From Macrostomum lignano (Eukaryota), in the NCBI GenBank assembly GCA_002269645.1, contig NIVC01000263.1:297330-361329 (forward strand): a stretch of DNA of 64,000 nucleotides, read 5' to 3'. This document shows positions 32,401-61,400 of the stretch, piece after piece (position 1 is the stretch's first letter; every line of letters starts with the position of its first letter). The translations under genes and the position numbers were made by a program. A model generated the notes under the pieces. That model searched no databases. It saw nothing but the letters and a program-made list of their open reading frames with translations, and was not told where the DNA came from.

Positions 32401-33093
32401 ATCAGATAAGCACAGGTACGCCAATCAGATAAGGACAGGTACATCAGTCAGATAAGCACAGGTACACCAGTCAGATAAGCACAGGTACACCAATCAGATA
32501 ATCACAGGTACACCAATCAGATAAGCACAGGTACACCAGTCAGATAAGCACAGGTACACCAATCAGATAAGCACAGGTACACCAATCAGATAAGCACAGG
32601 TACACCAGTCAGATAAGCACAGGTACACCAGTCAGATAAGCACAGGTACACCAGTCAGATAAGCACAGGTACACCAATCAGATAAGCACAGGTACACCAA
32701 TCAGATAAGCACAGGTACGCCAATCAGATAAGCACAGGTACGCCAATCAGATAAGCACAGGTACACCAATCAGATAAGCACATGTACACCAATCAGAAAA
32801 GCACAGGTACACCAATCAGATAAACACAGGTACACCAATCAGATAAAGACATACAGACATAAAAGAAGACAAAACTACAATGGGCATTCATCAGTGTGAA
32901 TAAGAGTACACTGGAATGGGAGAAAAATTAGGGGAACACATCGTCGTCATAATAGGAAGAGTTTTCTGAATAATTGATGAAGTTCGAGCCCAGTACCACC
33001 TCTTGATAATTTGACAATTTCATTTTTCTATCTGCACTCGGCGCTCGGTTCGTCAGACTTTTTCGCCATAATCTGTCAATAAAAGTCCAACGT

Positions 33094-33152
<59 letters not shown>

Positions 33153-39100: not shown

Positions 39101-42100
39101 TTATTATTATCCAGGCTGCGCAAGGGTTCCGCTTATCACCTGGACCTCTTGACCGTGGCGCTGATGAACGGAGTCATGTCCTGTTTCGGCTTACCCTGGG
39201 TGCACGGCGCCCTGCCGCACTCGCCGCTGCACGTGAAAGCTTTGGCCGACCTTGAGGAGCGAATCGACCTTGGCCAGCACGTGCACCAGAGGTGACCGGG
39301 GGCGGGGAGGCGGGCATTGGTTGGCAGTTGCTTCCAGACTGGGCTAGCTAACCACCTGTAAACCGCTGAAACAGACTACTCACCAATCTACGAGCTGGCC
39401 TAGTAATCTGCCAACTACCCAACCAATCTGCCAACTACCCAACCAATCTGCAAACTACCCAACCAATATGCCAACTACCCAACCAATATGCAAACTACCA
39501 AACCAATCTGCAAACTACCCAACCAATATGGAAGCTACCCAACTAATCTGCAAACTACCCAACCAATATGCAAGCTACCCAACTAATCTGCAAACTACCC
39601 AACCAATATGCAAGCTACCCAACTAATCTGCAAACTACCCAACCAATATGCAAGCTACCCAACCAATCTGCAAACTACCAAACTAATCTGCAAGCTACCC
39701 AACCAATCTGCAAACTACCCAACCAATATGCAAGCTACCCAACTAATATGCAAACTACCCAACCAATCTGCAAACTACCCAACCAATCTGCAAACTACCC
39801 AACCAATCTGCAAACTACCCAACCAACTGCAAACTACCCAACTAATCTGCAAACTTACCAAACCAACTGCAAACTACCCAACTAATCTGTAAACTTACCC
39901 AACCAACTGCAAGCTACCCTTGCCACCATTTCAGCGTCGTTCGAGTCCGCGAGACCCGGATCACCGGAGTTGTTTCAAATGTTCTGATCGGCCTGTCGCT
40001 ACTGATGTGCCCGGTGCCGCTCAGCTTCATCCCGGTCCCGGTGCTGGACGGCCTGTTCGTCTGCATGGCCATCACCGCCCTGTTCGACAACCAGCTGTTC
40101 GAACGGATCCTGCTGCTGTTCACTGAACAGGTAAACCGGGGGACAGGTGTTTGCAGTCAGAGGCATATAACAGGTATTAAAGCATCTAGGTCAGGGGGTC
40201 AACCGGCCCGCGATGCCTCTCTATCCGGCGTTCGGGTCCTTTGACACTTCACAATAGCAAGCCGGCCCTCGGGTCCTTTGAAACTTCACAATAGCAAGCC
40301 GGCCCTCGGGTCCTTTGACACTTCACAATAGCAAGCCGGCCCTCGGTCCTTTGAAACTTCACAATAGCAAGCCGGCCCTCGGTCCTTTGAAACTTCACAA
40401 TAGCAAGCCGGCCCTCGGGTCCTTTGACACTTCACAATAGCAAGCCGGCCCTCGGGTCCTTTGAAACTTCACAATAGCAAGCCGGCCCTCGGGTCCTTTG
40501 ACACTTCACAATAGCAAGCCGGCCCTCGGGTCCTTTGACACTTCACAATAGCAACCCGGCCCTCGGGTCCTTTGACACTTCACAATAGCAAGCCGGCCCT
40601 CGGGTCCTTTGACACTTCACAATAGCAAGCCGGCCCTCGGGTCCTTTGACACTTCACAATAGCAAGCCGGCCCTCGGGTCCTTTGACACTTCACAATAGC
40701 AAGCCGGCCCTCGGGTCCTTTGACACTTCACAATAGCAAGCCGGCCCTCGGGTCCTTTGACACTTCACAATAGCAAGCCGGCCCTCGGGTCCTTTGAAAC
40801 TTCACAATAGCAAGCCGGCCCTCGGGTCCTTTGACACTTCACAATAGCAAACCGGCCCTCGGGTCCTTTGACACTTCACAATAGCAACCCGGCCCTCGGG
40901 TCCTTTGAAACTTCACAATAGCAAGCCGGCCCTCGGGTCCTTTGACACTTCACAATAGCAAGCCGGCCCTCGGGTCCTTTGACACTTCACAATAGCAACC
41001 CGGCCCTCGGGTCCTTTGACACTTCACAATAGCAAGCCGGCCCTCGGGTCCTTTGACACTTCACAATAGCAACCCGGCCCGCTCAAGGCTTATGTCTGTT
41101 CTCAGCTCTCTTCTCTTTCCTCTCTCCCTTCTCTCTCCTCTCTTCTCTTCCCCTCTTTTCTTATCTTATCTCTTCTCTCTTCTCTCTTCCCTCATCCCAT
41201 CTCTAGCCCTTCCTCTCCCCTTTAATCTCTCATCTTCTATTCCTTCTTCCTTCCTCTCTCATCTGGCCCGCAGCCATGAGCTGGATTCTTTATCTGGCCT
41301 TTGATGCAAAACAATTTTCCCACCCCTGATCTAGTTATAAATAACTAAAGCAGGTAACTAGAACAGGTAACTAGAACAGGTAACTAGAACAGGTAACTAG
41401 AACAGGTAACTAGAACAGGTAACTAGAACAGGTAACTAGAACAGGTAACTAGAACAGGTACTAAAGTTTAAGCGCACTCCCATGATGCATCCCCAGGCCG
41501 CTTACCCACCGTCGCACTACCTGAGGCGGGTCCCGCAGCGCAAGGTGCACATTTTCACCTGCCTGCAGCTGCTGCAACTCTTTGTCCTGTGCGCCCTTGG
41601 ATTCAACAGCATCGCCTACGCCAAGCTCGGCTTCCCCGTCATCCTGTTTTTGCAGATGCCTGTCAGGTAAGGTCAACTGCCGGGGTGACGCTATCGGTGC
41701 TTTGGCATCTTTACACTCAATTTGGCGCTTAGACACCCACATTGGCCCTTAGACAGCCACATTGGCGCTTAGACACCCACATTGGCGCTTAGACACCCAC
41801 TTTGGCGCTTAGACACCCACTTTGGCGCTTAGACACCCACATTGGCGCTTAGACACCCACATTGGCGCTTAGACACCCACTTTGACGCTTAGACACCCAC
41901 TTTAGCGCTTAGACAGCCACTTTGACGCTTAGACACCCACTTTAGCGCTTAGACAGCCACATTTGCGCTTAGACACCCACATTGGCGCTTAAACACCCAC
42001 ATTGGCGCTTAGACACCCACTTTGGCGCTTAGACACCCACTTTGGCGCTTAGACACCCACATTGGCGCTTAGACACCCACTTTGGCGCTTAGACACCCAC

Positions 42101-42431
42101 TTTGGCGCTTAGACACCCACTTTGGCGCTTAGACGCCTACTCTGGCGCTTAGACAGGTCTACTTTGGCGCTTAGACACCTACTTTGGCTCTTAGACATGT
42201 CTAATTTGGCGCTTAGACACCTACTTTTCGCGCTTAGACACCTACTTTGGAGTTTAGACACTCAATTTGGCAGCAAAATCAGCTCCCCAGCAACCAGGGG
42301 TCCTAACCATGTATCCTAATCTGTATCTGAATCATATATCTGCATAACCCCTGCCTGACATTCCTAGGCACCTCCTCATACCAAAGCTAATTGATGAGAA
42401 CTATCTGGATGCCCTGGACAAACCAATGTAA
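25933..42431 (+). CDS. SLC4A11: SLC4A11-like (BTR1/NaBC1) bicarbonate-transporter-family membrane protein, 16 shared coding exons (~800 aa, plus an upstream N-terminal exon)
   Basis: Exons read with consistent AG/GT sites and phases: 25933-25970, 26060-26363, 27664-27748, 28612-28735, 29467-29676, 30293-30374, 30462-30584, 31093-31206, 33560-33766, 35227-35464, 36595-36701, 38228-38393, 39115-39291, 39935-40130, 41497-41666, 42368-42431 (TAA). They total 2405 nt, +1 nt from an upstream phase-1 exon = 802 codons. Family motifs: [174 protein letters not shown]. Confidence 0.92.
26995..27440. repeat. ~22-bp repeat AAAGGAAATGGCGCCCCTTGTC
   Basis: Degenerate tandem units with a GGCGCC palindrome. 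Confidence 0.85.
27773..28482. repeat. (AAC/ATC)n trinucleotide-type intronic repeat
   Basis: Direct reading; lies between SLC4A11 exons. Confidence 0.9.
28752..29402. repeat. 15-bp minisatellite GGGAGATCAAGGGAT
   Basis: Period 15. Confidence 0.92.
29695..30275. repeat. Compound repeat: CTCTACTCCCCA-like tract followed by 21-bp CTCTACCAATGAAGCTACCCT
   Basis: Direct reading. Confidence 0.88.
30625..30975. repeat. 20-bp degenerate repeat CTTCTTGTCACTCTCGTAGT
   Basis: Period about 20. Confidence 0.82.
32262..32848. repeat. 23-bp minisatellite ACACCAATCAGATAAGCACAGGT
   Basis: About 25 copies. Confidence 0.92.
33778..35180. repeat. 12-bp minisatellite GACACTAAG(A/G)CA
   Basis: About 115 copies. 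Confidence 0.94.
35476..36170. repeat. 42-bp minisatellite TGGATTGCTAATCTAGCCAACATCATATGTGAAGGAATAGAA
   Basis: About 16 copies starting ~11 nt after a donor. Confidence 0.92.
37110..38100. repeat. 7-bp repeat CCCTCAC
   Basis: Direct reading. Confidence 0.93.
38505..38905 (+). mobile_element. Second, unexpanded copy of the same hAT-like MITE family
   Basis: Shares CCGGCCCGCGA, one copy of GGGTCCTTGAAACTTCACAATAGCAA.CCGGCC, a CT-rich core, CTCATCTGGCCCGCA and a TTTGCCGACCCC end with the 40192-41328 element. Left end uncertain (perhaps CAGGGG at ~38433). Confidence 0.6.
39400..39915. repeat. 20-bp minisatellite AACCAATCTGCAAACTACCC
   Basis: Period 20. Confidence 0.9.
40192..41328 (+). mobile_element. 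Non-autonomous hAT (Charlie-like) MITE containing an internal 37-bp minisatellite
   Basis: Ends CAGGGG...CCCCTG; 8-bp target duplication ATCTAGGT (40184-40191) / ATCTAGTT (41329-41336); subterminal CGGCCCGC motifs. Confidence 0.75.
40234..41082. repeat. 37-bp minisatellite GGGTCCTTTGACACTTCACAATAGCAAGCCGGCCCTC inside the hAT MITE
   Basis: About 23 copies. Confidence 0.93.
41349..41460. repeat. 13-bp repeat GAACAGGTAACTA
   Basis: About 8 copies. Confidence 0.88.
41722..42255. repeat. 20-bp minisatellite TTGGCGCTTAGACACCCACA
   Basis: Period 20. Confidence 0.9.
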
Positions 42432-45801: not shown

Positions 45802-46473
45802 CTATCCCATGATGCGCAGGAGTCCACCGGATGCAACCCTGGTGATAGCCCCGGTCAGACTTCCGGTCACAGCCTCGACGATACTCCTTTTCCCCCAGCT
45901 GAAGAGCGTGCTGCACGCCTGATAGACGCTGTTGAAAGCGCTTTTCGCGTATTCGCGCATGCCAACGCGGCCACGCCAGACGTCGCCAAGGCCCAGAAAA
46001 TGCAGGCTGATCTTTTGCCCGTAGCGGCACAGAGTGGCAAAGTGCTCGCAGTTGTTGGCGGCAACATTGTAGTCCCAGTGCTTGTACAACCAGCTGCGAG
46101 CGTCGAACACAATCTGCGGCCTTGGCTTGGCCGGCAGGTCGTAATCGTGCAAGTTGTTCTTGCGCACCAGTGTGCCACGGAATACTTCTACCAGTAGGCC
46201 TCGCTTAGCTGGGCCCGATCCGACAATGTGAATGACGTCTCCATTGCCTACATAAACAGCGTAGTGGCTGTAAAAAAATTGATATATGTAGTTGCCCTTC
46301 TGCTGCACGAGGTCGCCAGGCTGCAGATGATTCACCAGGCTCTCCGGATCGCAGAAGTCGGAGGTGTCATGTCCACTGGCCTGACTGCCGGCATAGTTGT
46401 CGTATGCTGTCAGCGCTGAGCAACGAGTGTCTCTGTAGCCTCCGCTACGGTAGCTGCTGCTTGACTGTCCCAT
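45802..46473 (-). CDS. LRAT/PLAAT (HRASLS)-family permuted NlpC/P60 phospholipase/acyltransferase, 223 aa, intronless
   Basis: LQPGDLV, H-box SHYAVYVGNGDVIH and NC motif YNVAANNCEHFATLCRYG (His-His-Cys triad intact). The ATG start gives MGQSSS, matching the MGxxxS N-myristoylation consensus. Confidence 0.88.
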   Translation of the reverse strand: MGQSSSSYRSGGYRDTRCSALTAYDNYAGSQASGHDTSDFCDPESLVNHLQPGDLVQQKGNYIYQFFYSHYAVYVGNGDVIHIVGSGPAKRGLLVEVFRGTLVRKNNLHDYDLPAKPRPQIVFDARSWLYKHWDYNVAANNCEHFATLCRYGQKISLHFLGLGDVWRGRVGMREYAKSAFNSVYQACSTLFSWGKRSIVEAVTGSLTGAITRVASGGLLRIMG

Positions 46474-47991: not shown

Positions 47992-48417
47992 TTATGAGCC
48001 TTGAAATCTCAGCAATTCCCCCCTCCCCAACAGCCACAGCATCTCAGGAATTTCCCACATAAAATGTTTATGTTTATGTTTTATGTTCGATGACATAAAC
48101 TGTAACAGTTTGTGTAATTCAACACTCACACCAAGTCCGTTAGAGTAAAAGTTACAGAAAGCAGTTATGACGTAATAATGAGTTTCTCAGTCGTTCAGTT
48201 TTCAAGTCGAAAATTCTGCTTGACCTTTGCAAAAAAACAAGTTTTTCGAATACGAGTATTTAATTCCCTTAGCATTGAGCAATCAATGTGATTGATTCAT
48301 GGATTGATTCCGAAAAAAATCCCATCCAATAGTTAAAATTTGAAGAAAATTAGTCCAACCTCTATGTAGATAATCGATGGCATTTAAGCACGAAAGTAGA
48401 GTATAATAGAAGATTCC

Positions 48418-50220
48418 GAATAGATTCCGAATAGATACAGAATAGATACAGAATAGATACAGAATAGATACAGAATAGATACAGAATAGATACATGTACA
48501 GAATAGATACAAAATAGATACATGTACAGAATAGATACAGAATAGATACAGAATAGATACAGAATAGATACAGAATAGATATAGAATAGATACAGAATAG
48601 ATACAGAATAGATACAGAATAGATATAGAATAGATACAGAATAGATACAGAATAGATACAGAATAGATACAGAATAGATATAGAATAGATACAGAATAGA
48701 TACAGAATAGATACAGAATAGATACAGAATAGATACAGAATAGATACAGAATAGATACGGACTAGATACACAATAGATACATGTACAGAATAGATACAGA
48801 ATAGATACAGAATAGATACGGACTAGATACAGAATAGATACATGTACAGAATAGATACAGAATAGATACAGAATAGATACAGAATAGATACAGAATAGAT
48901 ATAGAATAGATACACAATAGATACAGAATAGATACAGAATAGATACAGAATAGATATAGAATAGATACAGAATAGATACATGTACAGAATAGATACAGAA
49001 TAGATACGGACTAGATACAGAATAGATACAGAATAGATACAGAATAGATACAGAATAGATACAGAATAGATACAGAATAGATACAGAATAGATACATAAT
49101 AGATACAGAATAGATACAGAATAGATACAGAATAGATACAGAATAGATACAGAATAGATACAGAATAGATACATGTACAGAATAGATACAGAATAGATAC
49201 GGACTAGATACAGAATAGATACATGTACAGAATAGATACAGAATAGATACGGACTAGATACAGAATAGATACATGTACAGAATAGATACAGAATAGATAC
49301 ATGTACAGAATAGATACAGAATAGATACGGACTAGATACAGAATAGATACATGTACAGAATAGATACAGAATAGATACAGAATAGATACAGAATAGATAC
49401 AGAATAGATACAGAATAGATACATGTACAGAATAGATACAGAATAGATACGGACTAGATACAGAATAGATACATGTACAGAATAGATACAGAATAGATAC
49501 GGACTAGATACAGAATAGATACATGTACAGAATAGATACAGAATAGATACGGACTAGATACAGAATAGATACATGTACAGAATAGATACAGAATAGATAC
49601 AGAATAGATATAGAATAGATACAGAATAGATACAGAATAGATACAGAATAGATACAGAATAGATATAGAATAGATACAGAATAGACACAGAATAGATACA
49701 GAATAGACACAATAGATACAGAATAGATACAGAATAGATACATGTACAGAATAGATACAGAATAGATACAGAATAGATACAGAATAGATACAGAATAGAT
49801 ACAGAATAGACACAATAGATACAGAATAGATACAGAATAGATACAGAATAGATATAGAATAGATACAGAATAGATACATAATAGATACAGAATAGATACA
49901 GAATAGATACAGAATAGATACAGAATAGATACGGACTAGATACAGAATAGATACATGTACAGAATAGATACAGAATAGATACGGACTAGATACAGAATAG
50001 ATACATGTACAGAATAGATACAGAATAGATACGGACTAGATACAGAATAGATACATGTACAGAATAGATACAGAATAGATACAGAATAGATATAGAATAG
50101 ATACAGAATAGATACAGAATAGATACAGAATAGATACAGAATAGATACAGAATAGATACAGAATAGATATAGAATAGATACAGAATAGATACAGAATAGA
50201 TATAGAATAGATACAGAATA
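48418..50220. repeat. 11-bp satellite ACAGAATAGAT with ACATGT / GGACT variants
   Basis: Period 11. Confidence 0.94.
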
Positions 50221-50698
50221 GAAGAGTAATAGAAGCGTAAAGAAGAGAAGAAATCTGAATGTTTTGTACCTTTTAGTTAAATGGAAAGCAAAATGCCAAT
50301 ACCCTACTTGAAGTAGAAACAACAATAAAATTACATCGAAAAATTCGTTTATGTGAGCAGCTCAAGCTGTTCTTTTCAACGCTCTCGACCGTTTTTTTAG
50401 TATTTTGAGCATAGCCAGCTTTTGCCCCAAGGTGCACAATGGAGTAGTGAGTTCATCTTGATGCAGGCGGGCTGGGGCAAACTACAATACTGTACATTGT
50501 GGCAGTTTTTTCAACCTACTTGTACAACTTCAGACACTTTGCGAGTGCTTTCAGCTTGTTGCACACAGAGAGAGTCCACTCAAAATTCCGTTTAAATACA
50601 ACGATAGCTAACCCTTATACGTAAATTCGACTGGAACTTTTTTGCTAAAATCATCTGTTCCTTGTTCTAATTGGAATTCGCTTGCTGTAAATGAGAAC

Positions 50699-52778
50699 AT
50701 GTCTCAAGTCGGTGGACGCAACCAGGAACGGATATCGGTACGTTGTAGAATCGTAAATGAGTCGTGAGAAAGTCGGCCAAAGGTCTAGCGTTAGCGCTTA
50801 ACTTTCTACTAACTCAGAGTGAATTGCGATTCTAATTCATGATTCATGATAAGTGACGCAGATGCGCTTTAGACGCAGCTCAGTTATTTACCTCGTAGTG
50901 ACTTCAGCACGCCTCAGATCCAGCTCTACAGTCTCAGAGTCACTTGCGTCACGTCACGTAAGAGTCGTTTCAGAGTCAAAAACAATAAAACACCCGACTC
51001 TTTGACGAATTTTTGGCGACTTGTACCGTGACATCTCATCGTTTTAGAGTCGTCTAGAGTCAAACTATTTCCTACTTCCTACTCTGGGACACGTCTTGGC
51101 CTGGGTACCGTTTTCATCGGGTCAGCAGTCAGTTTGTCAGTCAAATTTCGGACTCGGTCTCAAAACCTGTAGACTCAGTTATCCTTAATGACGCTCTTTG
51201 GTACTGTGCAGTAGGACTGTGTGAGACGATTGACAGAAAATTGATGGGCGAGTCACTGTTTAGACCCAACTTTAAATCAACTTTTAGGCCCGAGAACGCA
51301 GAAGTCTGAACGTTCTTCTCGTGGGGAAAACCGGCAGCGGCAAGAGCAGTCTCGGCAATGCGCTGCTGCGAGCTGGAGGGCGCCAGGAGGGCGCCGCCGC
51401 CGCTAACTTCGACGCATTCGGCGTCAACCACTCGTTCTGCAGTTCCAGCGTCGACTGCGAGGTTGCCGAGGCGTCCGTGGAAGGAAGACAGCTGACCGTG
51501 GTAGACACACCGGGTACAATGGATTCCAACAACCGCGAGAGAGCGCTTCATGAGGTGGCCAATGCCATAGTTCATTGTCGCGAGGGGTTTCACGTAATTC
51601 TAATAATAATCCGTGTTGACTGTCGCTTCACTGATGAAGACAGAGCCGCTGTGGAACTTGTGACGCGCATGTTCGGTGAAGACTTCTACAAGCACTGCAT
51701 AGTGGTGTTCAGCCACGGCGATGACATCGGCAATAGCGAAGAAGCGTTCGCCAGGCTCATCCACGAGGCCCGGAACGCAACCAAATTCCTAAACAGTCTT
51801 CTGAACCAATGCGGAAATCGCTTTGTCCTTGTAGACAATCATGGAAGCGTAGAGCACCTTCTTAGCAGGATGGACAGTCTGGTCCAGCAGAACAGAGGCG
51901 CGACCTTCACCAACCGGTACTTTGCTGAGGCTAAGGAGGCGCTGCGTCAGCTGCGGCCTGCTCTGCAATCCGAAGAGCAGCAGCGTCGCGAAGAATTCAA
52001 CAGGCTTGTGGAGAATGCGGGAAAGGACGAGCTGGTTCGACTGAGGAATGAACTGGAGCGGGACCTACAGCGGATTGGGGAGGCCGCGATGAAGAGAGCT
52101 GCAACTGATGTTGCTAATAGCGCCATTTTGAACGGTGACACCTGCTTCCCAAGCGACGCCACGGTCGTAACGCCCGATGGTCCAGTGCAGCTGCGCGACC
52201 TCCGGCTGGGCCAGCTGGTGCTTGGCAGGAAGGGCAGCTCAGGTAACCGCCTGGCATTTTCACCGGTCTACGCCTGGGGCCACCGGAACCCGGAGGTGGC
52301 GGACGCAACCTGGCTGTCGATTCGAACAGAATCTGGCGCGTGCCTCGCGCTGAGCCCCGGGCACCTGCTGCTTCTGGCCGAGACGGCAGAGAGTGCGGCT
52401 TGTGCACCGCGCGCTGCTCCCGCCAGCCAGCTGCGTGCCGGACAATCCTCTCTGTGGACGATGGGACCAGGTGGACTCCGAAGAGACCTCGTTGTGTGTG
52501 TTCAACAAGCCAGCAGCAGAAGCCACCGCGGCATCTACGCACCGTTCACCCTGAGCGGCAGTCTACTGGTTGACGGCGTGCTGGCATCCTGCTACGTCGA
52601 CTGCGGCCCGCTGACCGCGCCGCAGATGCACGCCCTCCTGGCTCCGGTGCGAGCAGCCTGGCGCGTCTGGCCAGCCGGCATGGCAGCCGTTGGCTGCCCT
52701 CAGCCCGGCAGTGGCGGCGGCATGCCCTGCTGGGTCCGACTGGCAGCAAAGCTCACCCGAGCTCTGTCTGAGGCATGA
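50699..52778 (+). CDS. AIG1/GIMAP-family GTPase fused to a Hedgehog-type Hint + sterol-recognition-like (Hog) domain, ~509 aa
   Basis: Predicted exon 1 50699-50737 (MSQVGGRNQERIS|GTACGT) and exon 2 51288-52778 (TTTTAG|, phase 0). GIMAP motifs: LNVLLVGKTGSGKSSLGNALL, VVDTPG, GFHVILIII..RFTDED...MFGE...IVVFSHGD, LLNQCGNRFVLVDN, QNRGATFTN, then a coiled coil. Hint starts at Cys codon 52143 (T|CFPSDATV): LRLGQLVL, FSPVYAWGHRN, LALSPGHLLL, GIYAPFTLSGSLLVDGVLASCY. SRR-like tail: HALLAPVR...GMPCWVRL. Exon 1 is less certain than exon 2. Confidence 0.9.
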
Positions 52779-53159
52779 AGGCCATTCAACGTTATTCTGT
52801 TTCCCGCCAGACTCTTGCTGAAAGAGGCGTTCTAGCTCTTGCAGCTTGTTAAAAGCAACTCTCTGATCTATGCATGCGGTATGTCATATCCTTAGATTGC
52901 ATCACCCAAATTGGGACAAGTACGCTCGTACTCTACTTTCAGTAGCCACATTTTTCTAAATAAATGACTAAAATTCTGAGAATTGGACAAGCAATTACAT
53001 GCGGCAATGTGGCTTCTTTTCACGTCACTGAATACTCGAAATGTTTGCGACAAGGACTACTAGAAGTACTTAGGTTCACTATTTTAACTTCAATTTCGTG
53101 TCTTAAAGCTAGATAGTCAGTCTGCTGCCTTTTGGACCATTTCTCACCTTTCGAACATC

Positions 53160-53640
53160 CAAATACCACTTTGAGCTGCCACCTCAGACCAAATACCACT
53201 TTGAGATGCCACCTCAGACAAAATCCCAACCTTGAGATGCCACCTCAGACCAAATACCACTTTGAGATGCCACCTCAGACAAAATACCACCTTGAGATGC
53301 CACCTCAGACAAAATCCCACTTTGAGATGCCACCTCAGACAAAATACCAACTTGAGATGCCACCTCAGACCAAATCCCACTTTGAGATGCCACCTCAGAC
53401 AAAATACCAACTTGAGATGCCACCTCAGACCAAATCCCACTTTGAGATGCCACCTCAGACAAAATACCAACTTGAGATGCCACCTCAGACCAAATCCCAC
53501 TTTGAGATGCCACCTCAGACAAAATACCAACTTGAGATGCCACCTCAGACCAAATACCACCTTGAGATGCCACCTCAGACCAAATGCCACTTGAGATACC
53601 ACCCCAAACCTAGTACCACACTGAGATACCACCTCAGACC
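53160..53640. repeat. 30-bp minisatellite TTGAGATGCCACCTCAGACCAAATACCACT
   Basis: About 16 copies. Confidence 0.9.
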
Positions 53641-54059
53641 AAACGCATACCAGCTTCAAAAATATTCGAAAATCATAAAGGCGAAAATATAGACAATTTA
53701 GAGGCTGAAAACTTAAAAGTAATTATTTCGTTAAATGAAATAAACAATCGTTATGTTCAATCCCATGTGCAGTCAAAATGTAGCTGTTCGATTTTGGAAA
53801 AACAAAATTGAAATACGCGTTTATGCTTGAGTCATTTTTTTTAAACTGCATAAGCACTGCTCGCAATCAGTTTGATTAATCCAATTTGGCGGCAATTTTT
53901 TATGAAGGAAACACAATTTTTATCATTTTAATTGTTATCGTTCTATTTTTGTTTTTGATTGAAATCTGCTGCAGTTGCCGCCGTCTGAGTAAAGCATTAG
54001 AAAGCAGGCTTCATCTCTTTCCTCCGACTGGCTTCAACCGACTGACTGTGTGGAATTGC

Positions 54060-54911
54060 AGTCACATCTGTAGCAAGTGTAGCATTTCAGTGACATCTGT
54101 AGCAAGTGTAGCATTGCAGTGACATCTGTAGCAAGTGTAGCATTGCAGTGACATCTGTAGCAAGTGTAGCATTGCAGTGACATCTGTAGCAAGTGTAGCA
54201 TTGCAGTGACATCTGTAGCATTGCAGTGACATCTGTAGCAAGTGTAGCATTGCAGTGACATCTGTAGCAAGTGTAGCATTGCAGTGACATCTGTAGCATT
54301 GCAGTGACATCTGTAGCAAGTGTAGCATTGCAGTGACATCTGTAGCAAGTGTAGCATTGCAGTGACATCTGTAGCAAGTGTAGCATTGCAGTGACATCTG
54401 TAGCATTGCAGTGACATCTGTAGCATTGCAGTGACATCTGTAGCATTGCAGTGACATCTGTAGCATTGCAGTGACATCTGTAGCATTGCAGTGACATCTG
54501 TAGCAAGTGTAGCATTGCAGTGACATCTGTAGCATTGCAGTGACATCTGTAGCATTGCAGTGACATCTGTAGCAAGTGTAGCATTGCAGTGACATCTGTA
54601 GCATTGCAGTGACATCTGTAGCATTGCAGTGACATCTGTAGCAAGTGTAGCATTGCAGTGACATCTGTAGCATTGCAGTGACATCTGTAGCATTGCAGTG
54701 ACATCTGTAGCATTGCAGTGACATCTGTAGCATTGCAGTGACATCTGTAGCATTGCAGTGACATCTGTAGCATTGCAGTGACATCTGTAGCATTGCAGTG
54801 ACATCTGTAGCATTGCAGTGACATCTGTAGCATTGCAGTGACATCTGTAGCATTGCAGTGACATCTGTAGCATTGCAGTGACATCTGTAGCATTGCAGTG
54901 ACATCTGTAGC
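54060..54911. repeat. 20/29-bp minisatellite GACATCTGTAGCA(AGTGTAGCA)TTGCAGT
   Basis: Two interleaved unit lengths. Confidence 0.92.
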
Positions 54912-55276: not shown

Positions 55277-57218
55277 TCAGTCCTTCAGCCACCGAGTCCA
55301 CTGGAGGGGATTCAGCACCTTCGAAGTGGTGGCAGCGGTGGGATCGCCTGTCAGAGCCTCTTCGCCACCAATCAGCTGGTCCAGGTCGTTAGAGCTGTGC
55401 ATTACATAGACTGGGGAAATGTGAAACAGTTTGTAACGTACGATAAGAAGACAAGTTATCATTGTTATAGCAGCATCTCATGCAACAGCCATCTGCTTAC
55501 ACTCTCTGCTATTTCCAATAACAGTTTCGAAAGCGCCCTTCACATCAGGTCCCTGCTGTTGCAGCTGTTGAACCGATTTAAGAAATCGTTTCCTAGCGTC
55601 CTCCTGTGCCAGTCCTTGATAGTTGACTGCGAGCACTTTGTAGAAATCTGCAGTCAGTTCGGGTGGCATTTCGTCGGTTAACAATGCATTTTATATATAA
55701 ATTTAAAAGTTATTGCGCAGCGCATCTGAAGGCTGCGTACAGCTGTTCAGTCCAAGGACTGGGGGGGGGGTCGCCACGCACCCTCAATTACCCCAGCTAA
55801 TGTTGGCACCCATTTTACAGCTGGGTGAACTGAAGCAATGCAGAGTTGAGTGTCTTGCTCAAGGACACAAATTGTTCCTAGTGGGTCGAGATTCGAACCC
55901 CTGACCTTCAAGTCGTGAGTCCGACACTCTAACCACTAGGCTGCAACCCCCTCACTTGGCAACAACCCCTTCACTAGCTAAAACCCCCTCACTAGGCTAA
56001 ATATAAAAAATGATATAAACAAATCAGAACACACCTTGATCGTTCCACACGGACTTTATGTCACCTAGCAACGACTTGGCAACGCAGTTGTCTTGCTTTT
56101 CGAAAGCCGGCAACGCGAGCTTAAGAAATTTGTTGTTCCAATCTTGGTCGAGTGTCAGGGCGTCTCGAATAGCCTTTCTCGCCGTCAGGGAATCTGAAAC
56201 GATTTCATTCAGTGAAACTCGACGCAGGGATTTGCGTTTTGCTGCTTCGAAAAAAAATGAATTTTGAATCAAAGACCGATAAACAGAAATATGAGAAATT
56301 CAAAAACGCATTAAAGAAAAGAGACAGTAAATGGACCCAAAATTAGTTGAAGGTGCTCAGCTTGCTATAGCAAAAATTTCCTAACAGAATCAACCCCCTC
56401 CTGCAGTGGGTCATTGTGGAGACGCGGTTGCTTTGATCAAGCGGCCACAATGAAGCCCCATGCCGATTTTCGAGCTCAAACGTCAAATTTATTTGACCGC
56501 GTACGAAATCGAACCCCAGGTACTTTGGAAAAACTGCTTCCAAAGTTTTCATATCAAGCTTTGCAACTTTCACAAGCATTGCGAAGTTTGTTTAGAATCG
56601 CTAAGATAGCTCGTATCAAGGCTCATGGAGGGTTATTGATGGAATTCTGTGACACAGGGGAAAGTACTGAGATGTCAAGGTTTATTTGAAACTTGCTGGG
56701 ATTGTCATGGCTCACGGGGGGGGGGGGTTGCTGAGATGCGAAGGGTCAATTGGGAGTTGTTGGTAGGTCAAGCATCAAAAGGGAGAGTTATTGGTAAAAC
56801 ATGGCTTAAAGGGAGGCTTTGATGTCAAGGATCATAGAGAATCTGATAGGCTTAGATAGCTGGCTTTCAGGGCTGATGCTTTTATGCTTTTAACATCATT
56901 TTTCTTGAGAAACTAACAACAGATTGTACTTTTATTTTATTCAAAATATTTTATTCCTTTCTTTTTTGCCTCCCCGTTTGGGGGGCGCAGATGGCTAGTC
57001 GACTATACTAAAAATGAGAGCTCCTCACCGTACTCCCAGATGTGAAACACTTGGTTCAGAGAGCCCAGCTCGGCAGACCAGTAGCCAACGATGCGCGAGT
57101 GTCGGACGCGAACTCGGAACACCTCCTGGACCAGACTGCGCATCCTCGGCAGATCCTGAGCAGCGATCCGGTACGTGCGCAGCTCGTACAGCTTCCCGAT
57201 GCTGCCTGTGAGCTTCAT
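55277..57218 (-). CDS. NIPSNAP: NIPSNAP-family protein (NIPSNAP3-like), 4 coding exons, possibly missing a 5' transit-peptide exon
   Basis: Exons (minus strand) 57218-57029, 56193-56035, 55647-55501 and 55410-55277 are phase-consistent and total 630 nt. Motifs: KLYELRTYRI, IVGYWSAELGSLNQVFHIWEYDSLTARKAIRDAL..DQDWNNKFL; the second repeat is divergent (VKGAFETVIG). Confidence 0.82.
55715..55948 (-). mobile_element. tRNA-derived SINE with a CORE/Meta-like central domain, in a NIPSNAP intron
   Basis: Minus strand: A-box-like GCAGCCTAGTGGTTAGAG, B-box GGGTTCGAATCTCG (55887-55900), then GTGTCCTTGAGCAAGACACTCAACTC...CCCAGCTGTAAAATGGG, resembling the conserved SINE central domain. Confidence 0.7.
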
Positions 57219-58432: not shown

Positions 58433-61400
58433 ATGGCGCAGCAGCAGCAGCAGCCGCCGCCTCTGTATCAGCAGCAGCAGCAGCATCAGGTTAGCAACCA
58501 GATGCAAGAAGGTGCCAAGTGTCTGCGATGGGAAGAGGTGAGCAGATTGTCATTAATTTAGCAGCAAAATCAAATCACGAGATTCTCTGTAAATGCAATC
58601 TAATATAAACTGTTTGGTTCGACTACGATTGCGCTTCACTCGTTTAAAAATACTCTGGTTCGAGAAATGAAATCAGCCAGATCTGACAGACCAATTAGTC
58701 TGACGCAGTGGCCATTGCATTTTTTGTGTCTAAATCCTGGAGTAGCTGGGGTGCCTGGGGTGGCTGGGGTGGCTCGGGTGGCTGGGGTGGCTCGGGTGGC
58801 TGGAGTGGCTGGAGTGGCTCGGGTGGCTGGGGTGCCTGGGGTGCCTGGGGTGCCTGGGGTGCCTGGGGTGGCTCGGGTGGCTGGAGTGGCTGGAGTGGCT
58901 CGGGTGGCTGGGGTGGCTGGGGTGGCTGGGGTGGCTGGGGTGGCTGGGGTGGCTGGGGTGGCTGGGGTGGCTGGGGTGGCTGGGGTGGCTGGGGTGGCTG
59001 GGTTGGCTGGGGTGCCTGGGTGGCTAGGGTGGCTTGAGTGGCTGGGGTGGCTGGGGTGGCTGGGTGGCTGGGTGGCTGGGGTGCCTGGGGTGCCTGGGTG
59101 CCTGGGGTGGCTCGGGTAGCTGGAGTGGCTGGAGTGGCTCGGGTGGCTGGGGTGGCTGGGTGGCTGGGGTGGCTGGGGTGGCTGGGGTGGCTGGGGTGGC
59201 TGGGGTGGCTGGGTGGCTGGGTGGCTGGGGTGGCTGGGGTGGCTGGAGTGGCTGGGGTGGCTGGAGTGGCTGGAGTGGCTCAGGTGGCTGGGGTGGCTGG
59301 AGTGGCTCGAGTGGCTCGGGTGGCTGGAGTGGCTGGAGTGGCTCGGGTGGCTGGAGTGGCTGGAGTGGCTCGGGTGGCTGGAGTGGCTGGAGTGGCTCGG
59401 GTGGCTGGAGTGGCTGGAGTGGCTCGGGTGGCTGGGGTGGCTGGGTGGCTGGGGTGGCTGGGGTGGCTGGGGTGGCTGGGTGGCTGGGTGGCTGGGGTGG
59501 CTGGGGTGGCTGGAGTGGCTGGGGTGGCTGGAGTGGCTGGAGTGGCTCGGGTGGCTCGGGTGGCTGGGGTGGCTGGGTGGCTGGGGTGGCTGGGGTGGCT
59601 GGGAAGGCTGGGTGGCTGGGAAGGCTGGGGTGGCTGGGTGGCTGGGGTGGCTGGGTGGCTGGGGTGGCTGGGGTGGCTGGGAAGGCTGGGGTGGCTGGGA
59701 AGGCTGGGGTGGGTTGGTGAGATGTCTGGCATGACTAAAATACTAAAAACTGAAATCAATCCCACCAGCGAGTGGATAAATGTCATTGCAAACAGAAATT
59801 ATAAAATTTCTCAAATTGCCCTAACTTAGGTTTGGATTAGAGCAGGTACTGATGACTCATACTTGATCACAGACTTGTCGTAACGTGCAACTAAAACACG
59901 TTTCTTCTTGAACGGGTTGTTGTTCCTTGCCTTTGCTCATCTCAATTCTCAAACTGACATGCCCGAATCGCCAGCCCTGGAGCGCGTGCGCTCTCCCTCT
60001 CTCACTGCTTATTGAATGATTGATGCGCGAACTGCTGTTGCGCGGATTCGAACTCCAACGTCAGTCCCTAGGGCGTTAGCTGCATTAGCTATTCAAGACA
60101 TCACAGCTCTCTTCCTCATTCACGTCCCAGCTGCAGTGGTTCAGCGATTGAAATTCTGGAATCACGTTTATTTATCCTTCATCCTTGTTCATGCGCAGGA
60201 TTCCACCGTGCCCAGGGCCGTGACGCTGAAGGTTGACGCCAGGGCCCACCTGCTGTTCTGGCAGGAGCTCAACGGGGTGAGTGTTCTGCGAGTCATGAGT
60301 CATAAAGTATGAGGCATCAAAAATTGAGGTATCCATATGCAACGTATATATCATGAGTCATCCATCAGTCACTAATATTAATTCATCTTTGACTCATACT
60401 CTCTGACACTGACTCATACTCTCGGACACTGACTCATCCTGACTCATGCTCTGACACTGACTCATACTCTCGGACACTGACTCATCCTGACTCATGCTCT
60501 GACACTGACTCATACTCTCTGACACTGACTCATACTCTCGGACACTGACTCATACTCTCGGACACTGACTCATACTCTCGGACACTGACTCATACTCTCG
60601 GACACTGACTCATACTCTCGGACACTGACTCACCCTGACTCATGCTCTCACACTGACTCATACTCTCTTACACTGACTCATACTCTCGGACACTGGCTCA
60701 TACTCTCGGACACTGACTCATACTCTTTCACACTGACTCATACTCTCTCACACTCATACTCTCGGACACTGACTCATACTCTCTCACACTGACTCATACT
60801 CTCTGACACTGACTCATACTCTTTCACACTGACTCATACTCTCTCACACTCATACTCTCGGACACTGACTCATACTCTCTCACACTGACTCATACTCTCT
60901 GACACTGACTCATACTCTCTCACACTGACTCATACTCTCGGACACTGACTCACCCTGACTCATGCTCTCACACTGACTCATACTCTCTTACACTGACTCT
61001 TACTCTCGACACTGACTCATACTCTCGGACACTGACTCATACTCTCTGACACTGACTCATACTCTCGGACACTGGCTCATACTCTCGGACACTGACTCAT
61101 ACTCTTTCACACTGACTCATACTCTCTCACACTCATACTCTCGGACACTGACTCATACTCTCTCACACTGACTCATACTCTCTGACACTGACTCATACTC
61201 TTTCACACTGACTCATACTCTCTCACACTTATACTCTCGGACACTGACTCATACTCTCTCACACTGACTCATACTCTCTCACACTCATACTCTCGGACAC
61301 TGACTCATACTCTCTCACACTGACTCATACTCTCGACACTGACTCATACTCTCTCACACTGACTCATACTCTTTCACACTGACTCATACTCTCGGACACT

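What the first reader, a model, noticed from the sequence alone, without database searches (positions are those of the whole stretch)
50699..52778. GIMAP/AIG1 GTPase fused to a full Hedgehog-type Hog (Hint + sterol-recognition) module: candidate self-cleaving, self-lipidating immune GTPase in an animal
Seen: one continuous ORF joins an AIG1/GIMAP GTPase (G1 GKTGSGKS, G3 DTPG, conserved box, IAN motif) and a coiled coil to a Hint domain. The Hint starts at Cys (codon 52143, about residue 299) and ends ...GVLASCY, followed by an SRR-like tail (HALLAPVR...GMPCWVRL) that aligns with the Hedgehog AHWGLAPMR...GIHWY pattern. There is no signal peptide and no GIMAP C-terminal TM anchor. Established: Hog domains autocleave at the N-terminal Cys and attach cholesterol to the upstream fragment, and many GIMAPs are membrane-targeted by a C-terminal TM helix. 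A GTPase+Hog architecture is known from the arbuscular mycorrhizal fungus protein GmGIN1; I do not recall it being characterised in an animal. Inference: the ~298-aa GTPase is released and possibly lipidated at its C-terminus in the cytosol, replacing the TM anchor. That would be Hedgehog chemistry used for intracellular membrane targeting or activation of a defence GTPase.
Basis: partly seen in the sequence, partly recalled or inferred. Interest (0 to 1): 0.88.

Follow-up and report, generated by a model that had tools for sequence, protein, structure and literature searches.

The report
Flatworm GIMAP GTPase with Hedgehog-type self-cleaving tail
This is a real two-exon gene of the flatworm Macrostomum lignano that fuses a GIMAP/AIG1 GTPase to a complete Hedgehog-type self-cleaving (Hog) domain; the fusion had already been noted, but never tested, in corals, snails, amphioxus and a mycorrhizal fungus, so the find is a new member of a known but uncharacterised family.

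Summary
The gene has exon 1 at 50699-50737, a GT-AG intron, and exon 2 at 51288-52778. It encodes a 509-aa protein identical to M. lignano BOX15_Mlig016153g2. Pfam finds AIG1 (1.4e-39) followed by Hint PF01079 (1.5e-27). There is no signal peptide and no TM helix.

The Hog half keeps the key residues:
- the nucleophile Cys299 (in C-F-P);
- S369-x-x-H372, matching the TXXH motif;
- the motif-J Cys448;
- a conserved 60-aa tail predicted as helix-loop-helix.

The Hedgehog general base Asp (D46) is His345. This His is invariant in the family, and the engineered D46H Hedgehog enzyme is active.

AIG1+Hint proteins were reported in Acropora (2013), Biomphalaria (2020), amphioxus (2025) and the fungal GmGIN1. 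I also found them in bivalves, abalone, other gastropods and a brachiopod, plus a second M. lignano paralog.

Nobody has tested cleavage or lipidation. The most likely mechanism is self-cleavage at Thr298|Cys299, with transfer of the 33-kDa GTPase onto a sterol-like alcohol as a membrane anchor. This is plausible but inferred. I rate it a new member of a known kind, of moderate interest.

The parts
50699..50737 (+). Exon 1: start codon plus 12 codons (MSQVGGRNQERIS)
   Evidence: Read directly from the sequence. It matches the N-terminus of deposited protein P0001.
50738..51287 (+). Intron of 550 nt, GT...AG (gtacgt ... ttttag)
   Evidence: The frame is closed by a stop codon immediately before 51288.
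51288..52778 (+). Exon 2: residues 14-509 plus the TGA stop. It contains both the GTPase and the Hog domain.
51306..51953 (+). AIG1/GIMAP GTPase domain (protein residues about 20-235)
   Evidence: Pfam PF04548 at 1.4e-39. GIMAP7 at 1e-23 by sequence. Foldseek hits GIMAP7 at E 3e-19.
51324..51347 (+). G1 / P-loop motif GKTGSGKS (residues 26-33)
   Evidence: Read directly; aligned to the GIMAP7 P-loop.
51504..51515 (+). G3 motif DTPG (residues 86-89); invariant in the 17-sequence family alignment
51915..52133 (+). Two long helices (residues 223-254 and 259-295) forming the stalk that ends 3 residues before the cleavage site
   Evidence: AlphaFold2 model with pLDDT mostly 85-95 in this stretch. 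Foldseek alignment to GIMAP7 spans about 289 columns and includes its C-terminal helices.
52140..52145 (+). Predicted scissile bond Thr298 | Cys299. Cys299 is Hint residue 1, in the motif C-F-P.
   Evidence: Aligned to Cys258 (C1) of Drosophila Hh-C. C-F-P is conserved in all full-length family members.
52143..52595 (+). Hint fold (residues 299-449)
   Evidence: Pfam PF01079 at 1.5e-27. Foldseek hits 1AT0 (TM 0.88, rmsd 2.3) and 6TYY (TM 0.86).
52281..52283 (+). His345, at the position of the Hedgehog general base Asp46/Asp303
   Evidence: YAWGHRNPE aligns to Drosophila ILFMDRNLE and to the D46H variant 6TYY FMHRNLE. The His is invariant in the family.
52353..52364 (+). S369-P-G-H372, the block-B TXXH motif
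   Evidence: Aligned to VTPAHLV of Drosophila Hh. The His is invariant, and the first position is S or T in all members.
52581..52595 (+). Motif J, LASCY, with Cys448 (equivalent to Hh C143)
   Evidence: motif nomenclature from PMC2362128.
52596..52775 (+). C-terminal SRR/ARR-like tail (residues 450-509): predicted helix 459-481, loop, amphipathic helix 494-508. Contains HALLAPVR and GMPCW.
   Evidence: Aligned to Shh HRAFAPFR and Drosophila HWGLAPMR. Helix-loop-helix in the model. H461, L464, P466, P475, P493 and W495 are invariant, and R468 nearly so, in 17 sequences. Hydrophobic moment of helix 494-508 is 0.66.
52959..52964 (+). AATAAA, a candidate polyadenylation signal about 180 nt after the stop codon
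   Evidence: Read directly; not verified with transcripts.

Best explanation
What it is. Window 50699-52778 (+) is an expressed, endogenous two-exon gene of Macrostomum lignano. It encodes a cytosolic 55-kDa precursor with three parts: an AIG1/GIMAP GTPase (residues about 20-235), a two-helix stalk (223-295) and a complete Hog autoprocessing domain. The Hog domain consists of a Hint fold (299-449) and a 60-aa adduct-recognition tail (450-509). The protein belongs to an old, conserved but biochemically untested AIG1-Hog family. That family is found in cnidarians, molluscs, brachiopods, flatworms, cephalochordates and glomeromycotan fungi (GmGIN1).

Proposed mechanism, all steps inferred by homology.
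1. Cys299 attacks the Thr298 carbonyl (N-to-S acyl shift, assisted by His372 of the SxxH motif) and forms a thioester.
2. The helix-loop-helix tail docks on the cytosolic face of a membrane and presents a lipid alcohol, most likely a sterol.
3. His345 acts as general base for attack of that hydroxyl on the thioester.
4. The 33-kDa GTPase plus stalk is released with a C-terminal lipid ester. This anchors it to the membrane at the position where GIMAP1/2/3/5 carry a hydrophobic anchor. The 22-kDa Hog fragment is discarded.

What is shown and what is not. The gene structure, domain identities, residue conservation, lack of a secretion signal and phyletic spread are shown. Cleavage, the nature of the adduct, membrane targeting and any immune role are inferred.
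For: Gene and domains.
- The gene model is canonical and equals the deposited protein.
- The GenBank annotation of this assembly derives from a genome-guided RNA-seq transcriptome (PMC5730564).
- The window is 100% identical to contig NIVC01000263.1, and a second identical copy lies on NIVC01000052.1.
- Domain E-values are 1.4e-39 and 1.5e-27.
- The model (pLDDT 76.7) matches GIMAP7 at E 3e-19 and Hh-C 1AT0/6TYY at TM 0.86-0.88.

Catalytic residues.
- Residues align to Drosophila Hh-C as C299=C1, H345=D46, S369/H372=T69/H72 and C448=C143.
- D86-T-P-G, H345, H372, S447, Y449, H461, L464, P466, P475, P493 and W495 are invariant, and C299, F300 and R468 nearly invariant, across 17 sequences from four phyla at only 25-41% overall identity.
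- The D303H (D46H) Hedgehog enzyme keeps its structure and activity and accepts more sterols (review PMC9163320).

The tail.
- In Hedgehog, the region after the Hint fold is needed to produce cholesterol-modified hSHH-N (PMC7242414). Strong conservation of the tail here therefore argues for adduct transfer rather than plain hydrolysis.

Family and location.
- A 38%-identical paralog, P0002, has the same architecture.
- Sixteen representative clusters among the best 150 hits carry AIG1+Hog.
- There is no signal peptide or TM helix, as was also noted for GmGIN1 (PMC2362128).
Against: - There is no experimental evidence of cleavage or lipidation for any member of this family, in any organism, in the literature I could search.
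- All characterised Hog-mediated cholesterol transfer concerns secreted Hedgehog proteins, which carry a signal peptide. A cytosolic reaction has no precedent.
- The residue before the Cys is Gly in Hedgehog. Here it is Thr, and it varies freely across the family (W, Q, S, G, A, K, D, E, F). The effect on efficiency is unknown.
- Similarity of the tail to the Hedgehog SRR covers the first helix (HxxxAPxR). It is only by eye for the last motif (GMPCW against GIHWY).
- Branchiostoma members have Thr instead of the motif-J Cys.
- The immune role rests on the family name only. The gene sits between an LRAT-like gene and a NIPSNAP gene, not in a GIMAP cluster.
Confidence: 0.5

Rival explanations
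1. Self-cleavage without lipidation. The Hog domain forms the thioester and this is resolved by water or a small thiol. A free, soluble GTPase is released, for example as a maturation or de-repression step, and the tail only serves folding or regulation.
For: The Hint fold alone supports thioester formation in Hedgehog. Non-splicing Hint domains can use hydrolysis (PMC7242414 introduction). No adduct is known for nematode Hog proteins either, which is why the name 'ARR' was coined (PMC2362128). The residue before the Cys is variable.
Against: The general-base position is invariantly His. Six tail residues are invariant and one more (R468) nearly so across four phyla. Neither would be needed for simple hydrolysis. 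In Hedgehog, loss of the general base blocks sterol transfer specifically.
Confidence: 0.27
2. The Hog domain no longer cleaves. It acts as a permanently attached lipid- or membrane-binding or protein-interaction module on the GTPase.
For: Cleavage is untested. Thr at position -1 and His at the general-base position differ from Hedgehog.
Against: Every catalytic position is conserved over a very long evolutionary time: Cys1, the His of TXXH, the general-base His and the motif-J Cys. The D46H Hedgehog enzyme is active.
Confidence: 0.12
3. The thioester serves as a reactive warhead. The Hog domain attaches the GTPase covalently to hydroxyl-bearing molecules that are not host sterols, for example lipids of a pathogen-containing compartment or dietary or symbiont sterols. 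Cleavage would then be triggered by the target.
For: The D46H Hedgehog variant has broadened substrate tolerance. The family sits in a GTPase clade linked to defence. Mollusc members add a stonustoxin-like pore-forming domain, and amphioxus members add CARD (PMC12373286).
Against: This is purely speculative. No data on substrates or on induction were available.
Confidence: 0.08
4. Annotation or assembly artefact, pseudogene or contaminant.
For: The window is extremely repeat-rich. I could not inspect RNA-seq reads directly.
Against: Both domains lie in one uninterrupted exon of 1,491 nt. The splice sites are canonical. There are two identical genomic copies and a diverged paralog with the same architecture. 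Orthologous architectures exist in many animal genomes. The annotation is transcript-based.
Confidence: 0.02

Closest known systems
GmGIN1 of the arbuscular mycorrhizal fungus Glomus (Funneliformis) mosseae
   Same: It has an N-terminal AIG1/IAN-like GTPase, a C-terminal bona fide Hog domain with motifs J and K, and no signal peptide (PMC2362128).
   Different: It is fungal. I could not obtain its sequence, so orthology, shared origin and the residue at the general-base position are untested.
AIG1+Hint proteins reported in Acropora millepora, Biomphalaria glabrata and Branchiostoma
   Same: They have the same two-domain architecture (PMC3723955; PMC7053062; PMC12373286). The Branchiostoma members aligned here share the C-F-P motif, the general-base His, SxxH and the tail motifs.
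   Different: Amphioxus members often add an N-terminal CARD and have Thr at the motif-J Cys. The M. lignano protein is the minimal form (GTPase, stalk, Hog) and comes from a phylum not reported before. None has been tested biochemically.
Hedgehog proteins (C-terminal autoprocessing domain HhC; PDB 1AT0, 6TYY, 7E2I)
   Same: Shared features are the Hint fold (TM 0.86-0.88), Cys1 in C-F-P, the His of TXXH, LASCY with Cys143, and the first SRR helix motif HxxxAPxR.
   Different: It lacks the HhN signalling domain and the signal peptide. The general base is His rather than Asp. Position -1 is Thr rather than Gly. The cargo is a cytosolic GTPase.
Vertebrate GIMAPs (GIMAP7, GIMAP2, GIMAP5 and others)
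   Same: The GTPase core with the G1 and G3 motifs and the conserved box is shared, as are the C-terminal helices. An Arg aligns with GIMAP7 R103 in 'GRYT'. There is a Foldseek match.
   Different: Vertebrate GIMAPs end either in a hydrophobic membrane anchor (GIMAP1/2/3/5) or in nothing (PMC8201404). None has a Hog domain.
Hog-only proteins of protists and algae, and nematode Hh-related proteins (warthog, groundhog, quahog)
   Same: They are non-Hedgehog cargoes attached to a Hog domain. The protist and algal ones share the F-G-H-R general-base His.
   Different: Those with complete sequences mostly have signal peptides or short unknown N-terminal regions (PMC2362128). None carries a GTPase.

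Membership tests
AIG1/GIMAP (IAN) GTPases, Pfam PF04548 | Match to the AIG1 profile above the curated cut-off | tested here: met
   136.1 bits against a cut-off of 27, E 1.4e-39, profile positions 1-208 of 212.
AIG1/GIMAP (IAN) GTPases, Pfam PF04548 | Nucleotide-binding motifs G1 (GxxxxGKS) and G3 (DxxG), and the conserved box between G3 and G4 | tested here: met
   GKTGSGKS, DTPG and the box (GFHVILIIIRVDCRFTDED) all align to GIMAP7, GIMAP4 and GIMAP5. G4 reads SHGD, where the family consensus is THGD.
AIG1/GIMAP (IAN) GTPases, Pfam PF04548 | GIMAP fold including the C-terminal helices packed after the G domain | tested here: met
   The AlphaFold2 model matches GIMAP7 3ZJC at E 3e-19 and target TM 0.68-0.73 over about 289 columns. 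This is a prediction, not a solved structure.
AIG1/GIMAP (IAN) GTPases, Pfam PF04548 | GTP binding and hydrolysis; a role in immunity or cell survival | not testable with these tools
   No biochemical or expression data were available.
Hog domain (Hint + SRR/ARR), Pfam PF01079 | Match to the Hedgehog-type Hint profile above the curated cut-off | tested here: met
   97.1 bits against a cut-off of 29.7, E 1.5e-27. Foldseek hits 1AT0 at TM 0.88.
Hog domain (Hint + SRR/ARR), Pfam PF01079 | N-terminal nucleophile Cys, and the block-B TXXH motif | tested here: met
   Cys299 lies in C-F-P. S369-P-G-H372 aligns to T-P-A-H of Drosophila Hh; Ser for Thr is a conservative change.
Hog domain (Hint + SRR/ARR), Pfam PF01079 | Motif J (VLASCY) with the conserved Cys | tested here: met
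   GVLASCY with Cys448.
Hog domain (Hint + SRR/ARR), Pfam PF01079 | A C-terminal extension of about 60 aa after the Hint fold (SRR/ARR) with a helix-loop-helix | tested here: met
   Residues 450-509. Predicted helices at 459-481 and 494-508. HALLAPVR aligns to Shh HRAFAPFR and Drosophila HWGLAPMR. Six positions are invariant and one more (R468) nearly so in the family.
Hog domain (Hint + SRR/ARR), Pfam PF01079 | Autocleavage at the Cys and transfer of the N-fragment to an adduct | not testable with these tools
   This needs protein chemistry.
Hedgehog proteins proper | N-terminal HhN signalling domain (PF01085) and a signal peptide | tested here: not met
   There is no PF01085 match. The N-terminus is hydrophilic and leads straight into the P-loop.
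Hedgehog proteins proper | Asp general base (D46/D303) and Gly at position -1 | tested here: not met
   His345 and Thr298 occupy these positions. His is the state in all AIG1-Hog proteins and in the protist and algal Hog proteins examined; Asp occurs only in the two true Hedgehogs.
AIG1-Hog (GIN1-like) architecture | AIG1 GTPase N-terminal to a Hog domain in one polypeptide without a signal peptide | tested here: met
   The same architecture was confirmed by Pfam in 7 relatives and by a Hog-only profile in 16 representative clusters.
AIG1-Hog (GIN1-like) architecture | Common descent with fungal GmGIN1 and with the other animal members (a single fusion event) | tested here: inconclusive
   The AIG1 halves mostly have other AIG1-Hog proteins as best hits across phyla, but the comparison pool was biased. 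A neighbour-joining tree of the Hog halves does not resolve the group (6/100 bootstrap).
Inteins (protein splicing) | A C-terminal block-G His-Asn followed by a C-extein that starts with Cys, Ser or Thr | tested here: not met
   The protein ends after the tail, so there is no C-extein, and motif J replaces block G. 'Protein splicing', as suggested for the coral proteins, is not expected. Only N-terminal cleavage is expected.

The most novel reading that the evidence does not exclude
Hog-catalysed self-lipidation operates in the cytosol as an ancient way of anchoring a GIMAP-type GTPase to membranes. It would be conserved from fungi to chordates and use the His-type general base shared with protist Hog domains. 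Hedgehog's cholesterol modification would then be a secreted, derived special case of an older intracellular chemistry. It would also be the first enzyme-free lipid anchoring of a cytosolic GTPase.
Probability: 0.3. Interest if true: 0.8.

Novelty: new member of a known kind. Interest (0 to 1): 0.45.

Why it matters
Outside the Hedgehog ligands and their relatives, no protein is known to lipidate itself through a Hog domain, and all studied cases are secreted proteins. A cytosolic GTPase of the GIMAP clade carrying an intact Hog domain makes a testable question concrete. Can Hedgehog chemistry work on the cytosolic face of membranes, and does it replace the hydrophobic anchor of other GIMAPs?

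M. lignano is a good organism for this test, for three reasons:
- transgenesis is established (PMC5730564);
- the protein is the minimal form of the family (GTPase, stalk, Hog);
- two diverged paralogs allow comparison.

The finding also corrects the record. The architecture is not unique to amphioxus among animals, as stated in 2025. It is spread over at least five animal phyla. The His at the general-base position, so far discussed as an engineered swap, is the natural state in this family and in the protist and algal Hog domains examined.

Tried and rejected
- Word-indexed searches. Searches with a Hog-only alignment and with a 17-sequence full-length alignment returned only 17 and 5 hits and missed known family members. 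They gave no census, and all three searches of that kind are now used.
- Hog tree. A neighbour-joining tree of Hog domains with 100 bootstraps did not resolve whether AIG1-Hog domains form one clade (6/100). The question of single versus multiple fusion, or HGT from or to fungi, stays open.
- Selection test. Comparing the two genomic copies was uninformative. They are 100% identical over the gene, including the intron.
- Gene identifiers. A literature search for Mlig016153 and Mlig029920 found nothing.
- Primary paper. The D46H paper (PMC7106946) is not held. I relied on the review PMC9163320.
- Other copies. A search for further AIG1 or Hog copies in the window found none.
- Rejected ideas. 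Tandem GIMAP cluster: neighbours are SLC4, LRAT-like and NIPSNAP genes. Intein-type splicing: there is no C-extein. True Hedgehog: there is no HhN domain and no signal peptide. Minus-strand ORFs overlapping the gene: these are chance ORFs in a G+C-rich exon with no homologs.
Full report
OBSERVATION

The reported interval is accurate to the base. An ATG at 50699 opens a 13-codon exon, followed by a canonical donor (gtacgt) at 50738. The intron ends in ttttag at 51287. A single 1,491-nt exon then runs from 51288 to the TGA at 52776-52778. The open frame of exon 2 has no ATG before the P-loop, so exon 1 is needed.

The spliced product is identical over all 509 residues to the deposited Macrostomum lignano protein BOX15_Mlig016153g2 (P0001). 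The window is 100% identical over the 8 kb compared to contig NIVC01000263.1 of assembly GCA_002269645.1. A second contig carries a copy that is identical even in the intron. This agrees with the known large-scale duplication in this line (PMC5730564). The GenBank annotation of that assembly was derived from a genome-guided RNA-seq transcriptome, so the model rests on transcripts. I could not inspect the reads myself. Both domains lie in one exon, so no splice is needed to join them.

DOMAINS

- Pfam gives AIG1 (PF04548) at 1.4e-39 and the Hedgehog-type Hint module (PF01079) at 1.5e-27. Both are far above their curated cut-offs.
- Against solved structures, the N-terminal half matches GIMAP7, 4, 5, 2 and 1 (1e-23 to 1e-14). 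The C-terminal half matches Sonic hedgehog and Drosophila Hedgehog (6.6e-11 to 5.6e-07).
- An AlphaFold2 model built on a 17-sequence family alignment has mean pLDDT 76.7 and pTM 0.63. It shows a G domain, two long helices (223-254 and 259-295) that end three residues before Cys299, a beta-rich Hint fold (300-447) and a helix-loop-helix tail (459-481 and 494-508).
- Foldseek returns GIMAP7 (E 3e-19), then the Hedgehog autoprocessing domain: 6TYY at TM 0.86 and 1AT0 at TM 0.88.
- The N-terminus is hydrophilic (mean Kyte-Doolittle value -1.35). No 19-residue window reaches 1.6. There is therefore neither a signal peptide nor a TM helix.

CATALYTIC INVENTORY

Residue-level alignment to Drosophila Hh-C gives these equivalences:

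| M. lignano | Hedgehog (Hint numbering) | Note |
|---|---|---|
| Cys299 | Cys1 | motif C-F-P |
| His345 | Asp46 (Asp303) | YAWGHRNPE against ILFMDRNLE |
| Ser369 / His372 | Thr69 / His72 | block-B TXXH |
| Cys448 | Cys143 | LASCY, motif J |

The first tail helix motif HALLAPVR aligns to HWGLAPMR in Drosophila and HRAFAPFR in Shh.

The one clear departure from Hedgehog is His at the general-base position. That exact substitution was engineered in Drosophila Hh (D303H, structure 6TYY). It is reported to keep structure and activity while widening sterol tolerance (review PMC9163320).

In my table of 28 Hog domains:
- His is invariant in all AIG1-Hog proteins.
- His is present in six of the seven protist and algal Hog-only proteins retrieved (the seventh, P0281, has Asn).
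- Asp occurs only in the two true Hedgehogs.

The Hog domain here is thus of the general, non-Hedgehog type rather than a copy of the animal's Hedgehog. The residue before the Cys is Gly in Hedgehog, Thr here, and freely variable in the family.

THE FAMILY

A profile of the two M. lignano paralogs was searched against 1.84 billion representative proteins. A local scan of the best 150 hits with a Hog-only profile followed. Together they show 16 representative clusters with AIG1 followed by Hog. The source names are:
- Macrostomum lignano (two paralogs, 38% identical);
- the bivalve Potamilus streckersoni;
- the abalones Haliotis cracherodii and H. rufescens;
- the gastropods Physella acuta, Plakobranchus ocellatus and Bradybaena similaris;
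- the brachiopod Lingula anatina;
- Branchiostoma lanceolatum and B. belcheri;
- one unnamed ENA assembly.

Across 17 aligned members that share only 25-41% identity with the query, the following residues are invariant or nearly so:
- G1 and G3: G26, G29, G31 and K32 of the P-loop (nearly invariant) and D86-T-P-G;
- the Hint fold: Cys299, Phe300, His345, His372, Ser447 and Tyr449;
- the tail: H461, L464, P466, R468, P475, P493 and W495.

This is strong evidence that both halves, including the tail, are under purifying selection.

PRIOR LITERATURE

The architecture is known.
- GmGIN1 of Glomus mosseae has an AIG1/IAN-like GTPase plus a bona fide Hog domain and no signal peptide (PMC2362128).
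- Four AIG1+Hint transcripts were reported in the coral Acropora millepora (PMC3723955).
- AIG1+HINT and CARD+AIG1+HINT were described in amphioxus in 2025. That paper states these are unique to amphioxus among animals (PMC12373286). My hits and the two earlier papers contradict that statement.

I found no report of any biochemical test of cleavage or lipidation for any member.

MECHANISM

Best-supported reading (confidence about 0.5): the 55-kDa precursor undergoes an N-to-S acyl shift at Thr298-Cys299. The thioester is then resolved by a lipid alcohol presented by the tail, with His345 as general base. This releases a 33.1-kDa GTPase plus stalk bearing a C-terminal lipid ester, and a 22.0-kDa Hog fragment (masses).

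Arguments for adduct transfer rather than simple hydrolysis:
- In Hedgehog, the Hint fold alone suffices for thioester formation. The general base activates the sterol hydroxyl, and the region after the Hint fold is needed to make the cholesterol-modified product.
- Both of those features are invariant in this family.
- The last helix is strongly amphipathic (hydrophobic moment 0.66), which fits membrane docking.
- The cleavage site lies at the end of the stalk helices. That is the position where GIMAP1/2/3/5 carry their hydrophobic anchor (PMC8201404).

All of this is inference.

Rivals:
- cleavage without lipidation (0.27);
- a non-cleaving binding module (0.12);
- a thioester warhead aimed at non-host lipids (0.08);
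- an artefact (0.02).

The 'immune' label rests only on family membership. The neighbours are an SLC4 bicarbonate transporter, an LRAT/PLAAT-like gene and a NIPSNAP gene, not other GIMAPs.

ORIGIN OF THE FUSION

This is unresolved.
- The AIG1 halves of AIG1-Hog proteins mostly have one another as best hits even across phyla. For example, amphioxus hits gastropods, and flatworm hits abalone and bivalve. However, the comparison pool was selected with a flatworm profile and is biased.
- A neighbour-joining tree of the Hog halves is star-like, with 6/100 bootstrap support for an AIG1-Hog group.
- I could not obtain the GmGIN1 sequence.

VERDICT

The gene is a new (flatworm) member of a known but functionally untested family. 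The self-lipidation idea remains an attractive experiment, and M. lignano is a practical system for it. The discovery value of the architecture itself is modest.

Noticed in passing
Relatives P0141 (Potamilus streckersoni, residues 1-320) and P0185 (Haliotis cracherodii, residues 1-370): These mollusc AIG1-Hog proteins carry an extra N-terminal domain homologous to the MACPF/CDC pore-forming domain of stonustoxin alpha (PDB 4WVM_A, E 8.5e-8). The Pfam MACPF match is only 1.1e-3, below its cut-off. This gives a pore-former + GTPase + Hog three-domain protein.
   Followed up: partly
Literature against hits P0141, P0185, P0202, P0001 and others: The 2025 amphioxus pangenome paper (PMC12373286) states that AIG1+HINT architectures are unique to amphioxus among animals. 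The flatworm, mollusc and brachiopod proteins found here contradict this, as do the earlier coral and snail reports.
   Followed up: yes
Hog alignment of 28 sequences; window 52281-52283: His at the Hedgehog Asp46 position is invariant in AIG1-Hog proteins and present in six of the seven protist/algal Hog-only proteins retrieved (F-G-H-R). Asp appears only in the two true Hedgehogs. The engineered 'general base swap' D46H thus mirrors what may be the ancestral state.
   Followed up: partly
window 45802-46473 (-): This is a single-exon 223-aa ORF of the LRAT/PLAAT (H-RAS-like suppressor) family (PF04970, 8.5e-18) with the NCEHF catalytic motif. It starts MGQSSS, a possible N-myristoylation site. 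It is a lipid-acyltransferase-type gene 4.2 kb upstream of the AIG1-Hog gene on the opposite strand. The other genomic copy also has it (L002).
   Followed up: partly
window about 29400-42431 (+): Exons of an SLC4-type bicarbonate transporter (PF00955, 7.3e-19 for 33505-33780) are interrupted by long tandem repeats. The called gene ends near 42431 by transfer from L001.
   Followed up: partly
window about 55277-57218 (-): A NIPSNAP-family gene (209 aa, PF07978) is called downstream on the identical contig L001. Coordinates were transferred by the 40,698-nt offset. Identity to the window was verified only up to 55778.
   Followed up: no
window, many places, e.g. 2000-2900, 7900-9500, 10900-14200, 33700-35300, 48300-50300, 53100-53700, 54000-54900, 59000-59800: Very long mini- and microsatellite arrays produce spurious ORFs of up to 1,112 aa in several frames on both strands. 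This is consistent with the reported 15% simple and tandem repeat content of the M. lignano genome. ORF lists here are dominated by these artefacts.
   Followed up: no
P0231 / P0294 (M. lignano, UniRef A0A1I8GAU7 / A0A1I8G144): A third M. lignano AIG1 paralog is the closest GTPase to both AIG1-Hog paralogs (42-44% identity). It has a coiled coil but no Hog domain in either deposited model. The two models diverge after residue 286, so the 3' end may be mis-annotated.
   Followed up: partly
P0202 (Lingula anatina), P0189 (Haliotis rufescens), P0266 (Branchiostoma belcheri): Public names hide the family. AIG1-Hog proteins are labelled 'protein Spindly-like' and 'coiled-coil domain-containing protein 18-like'. 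A Hog fragment of one is labelled 'desert hedgehog protein B-like'.
   Followed up: no
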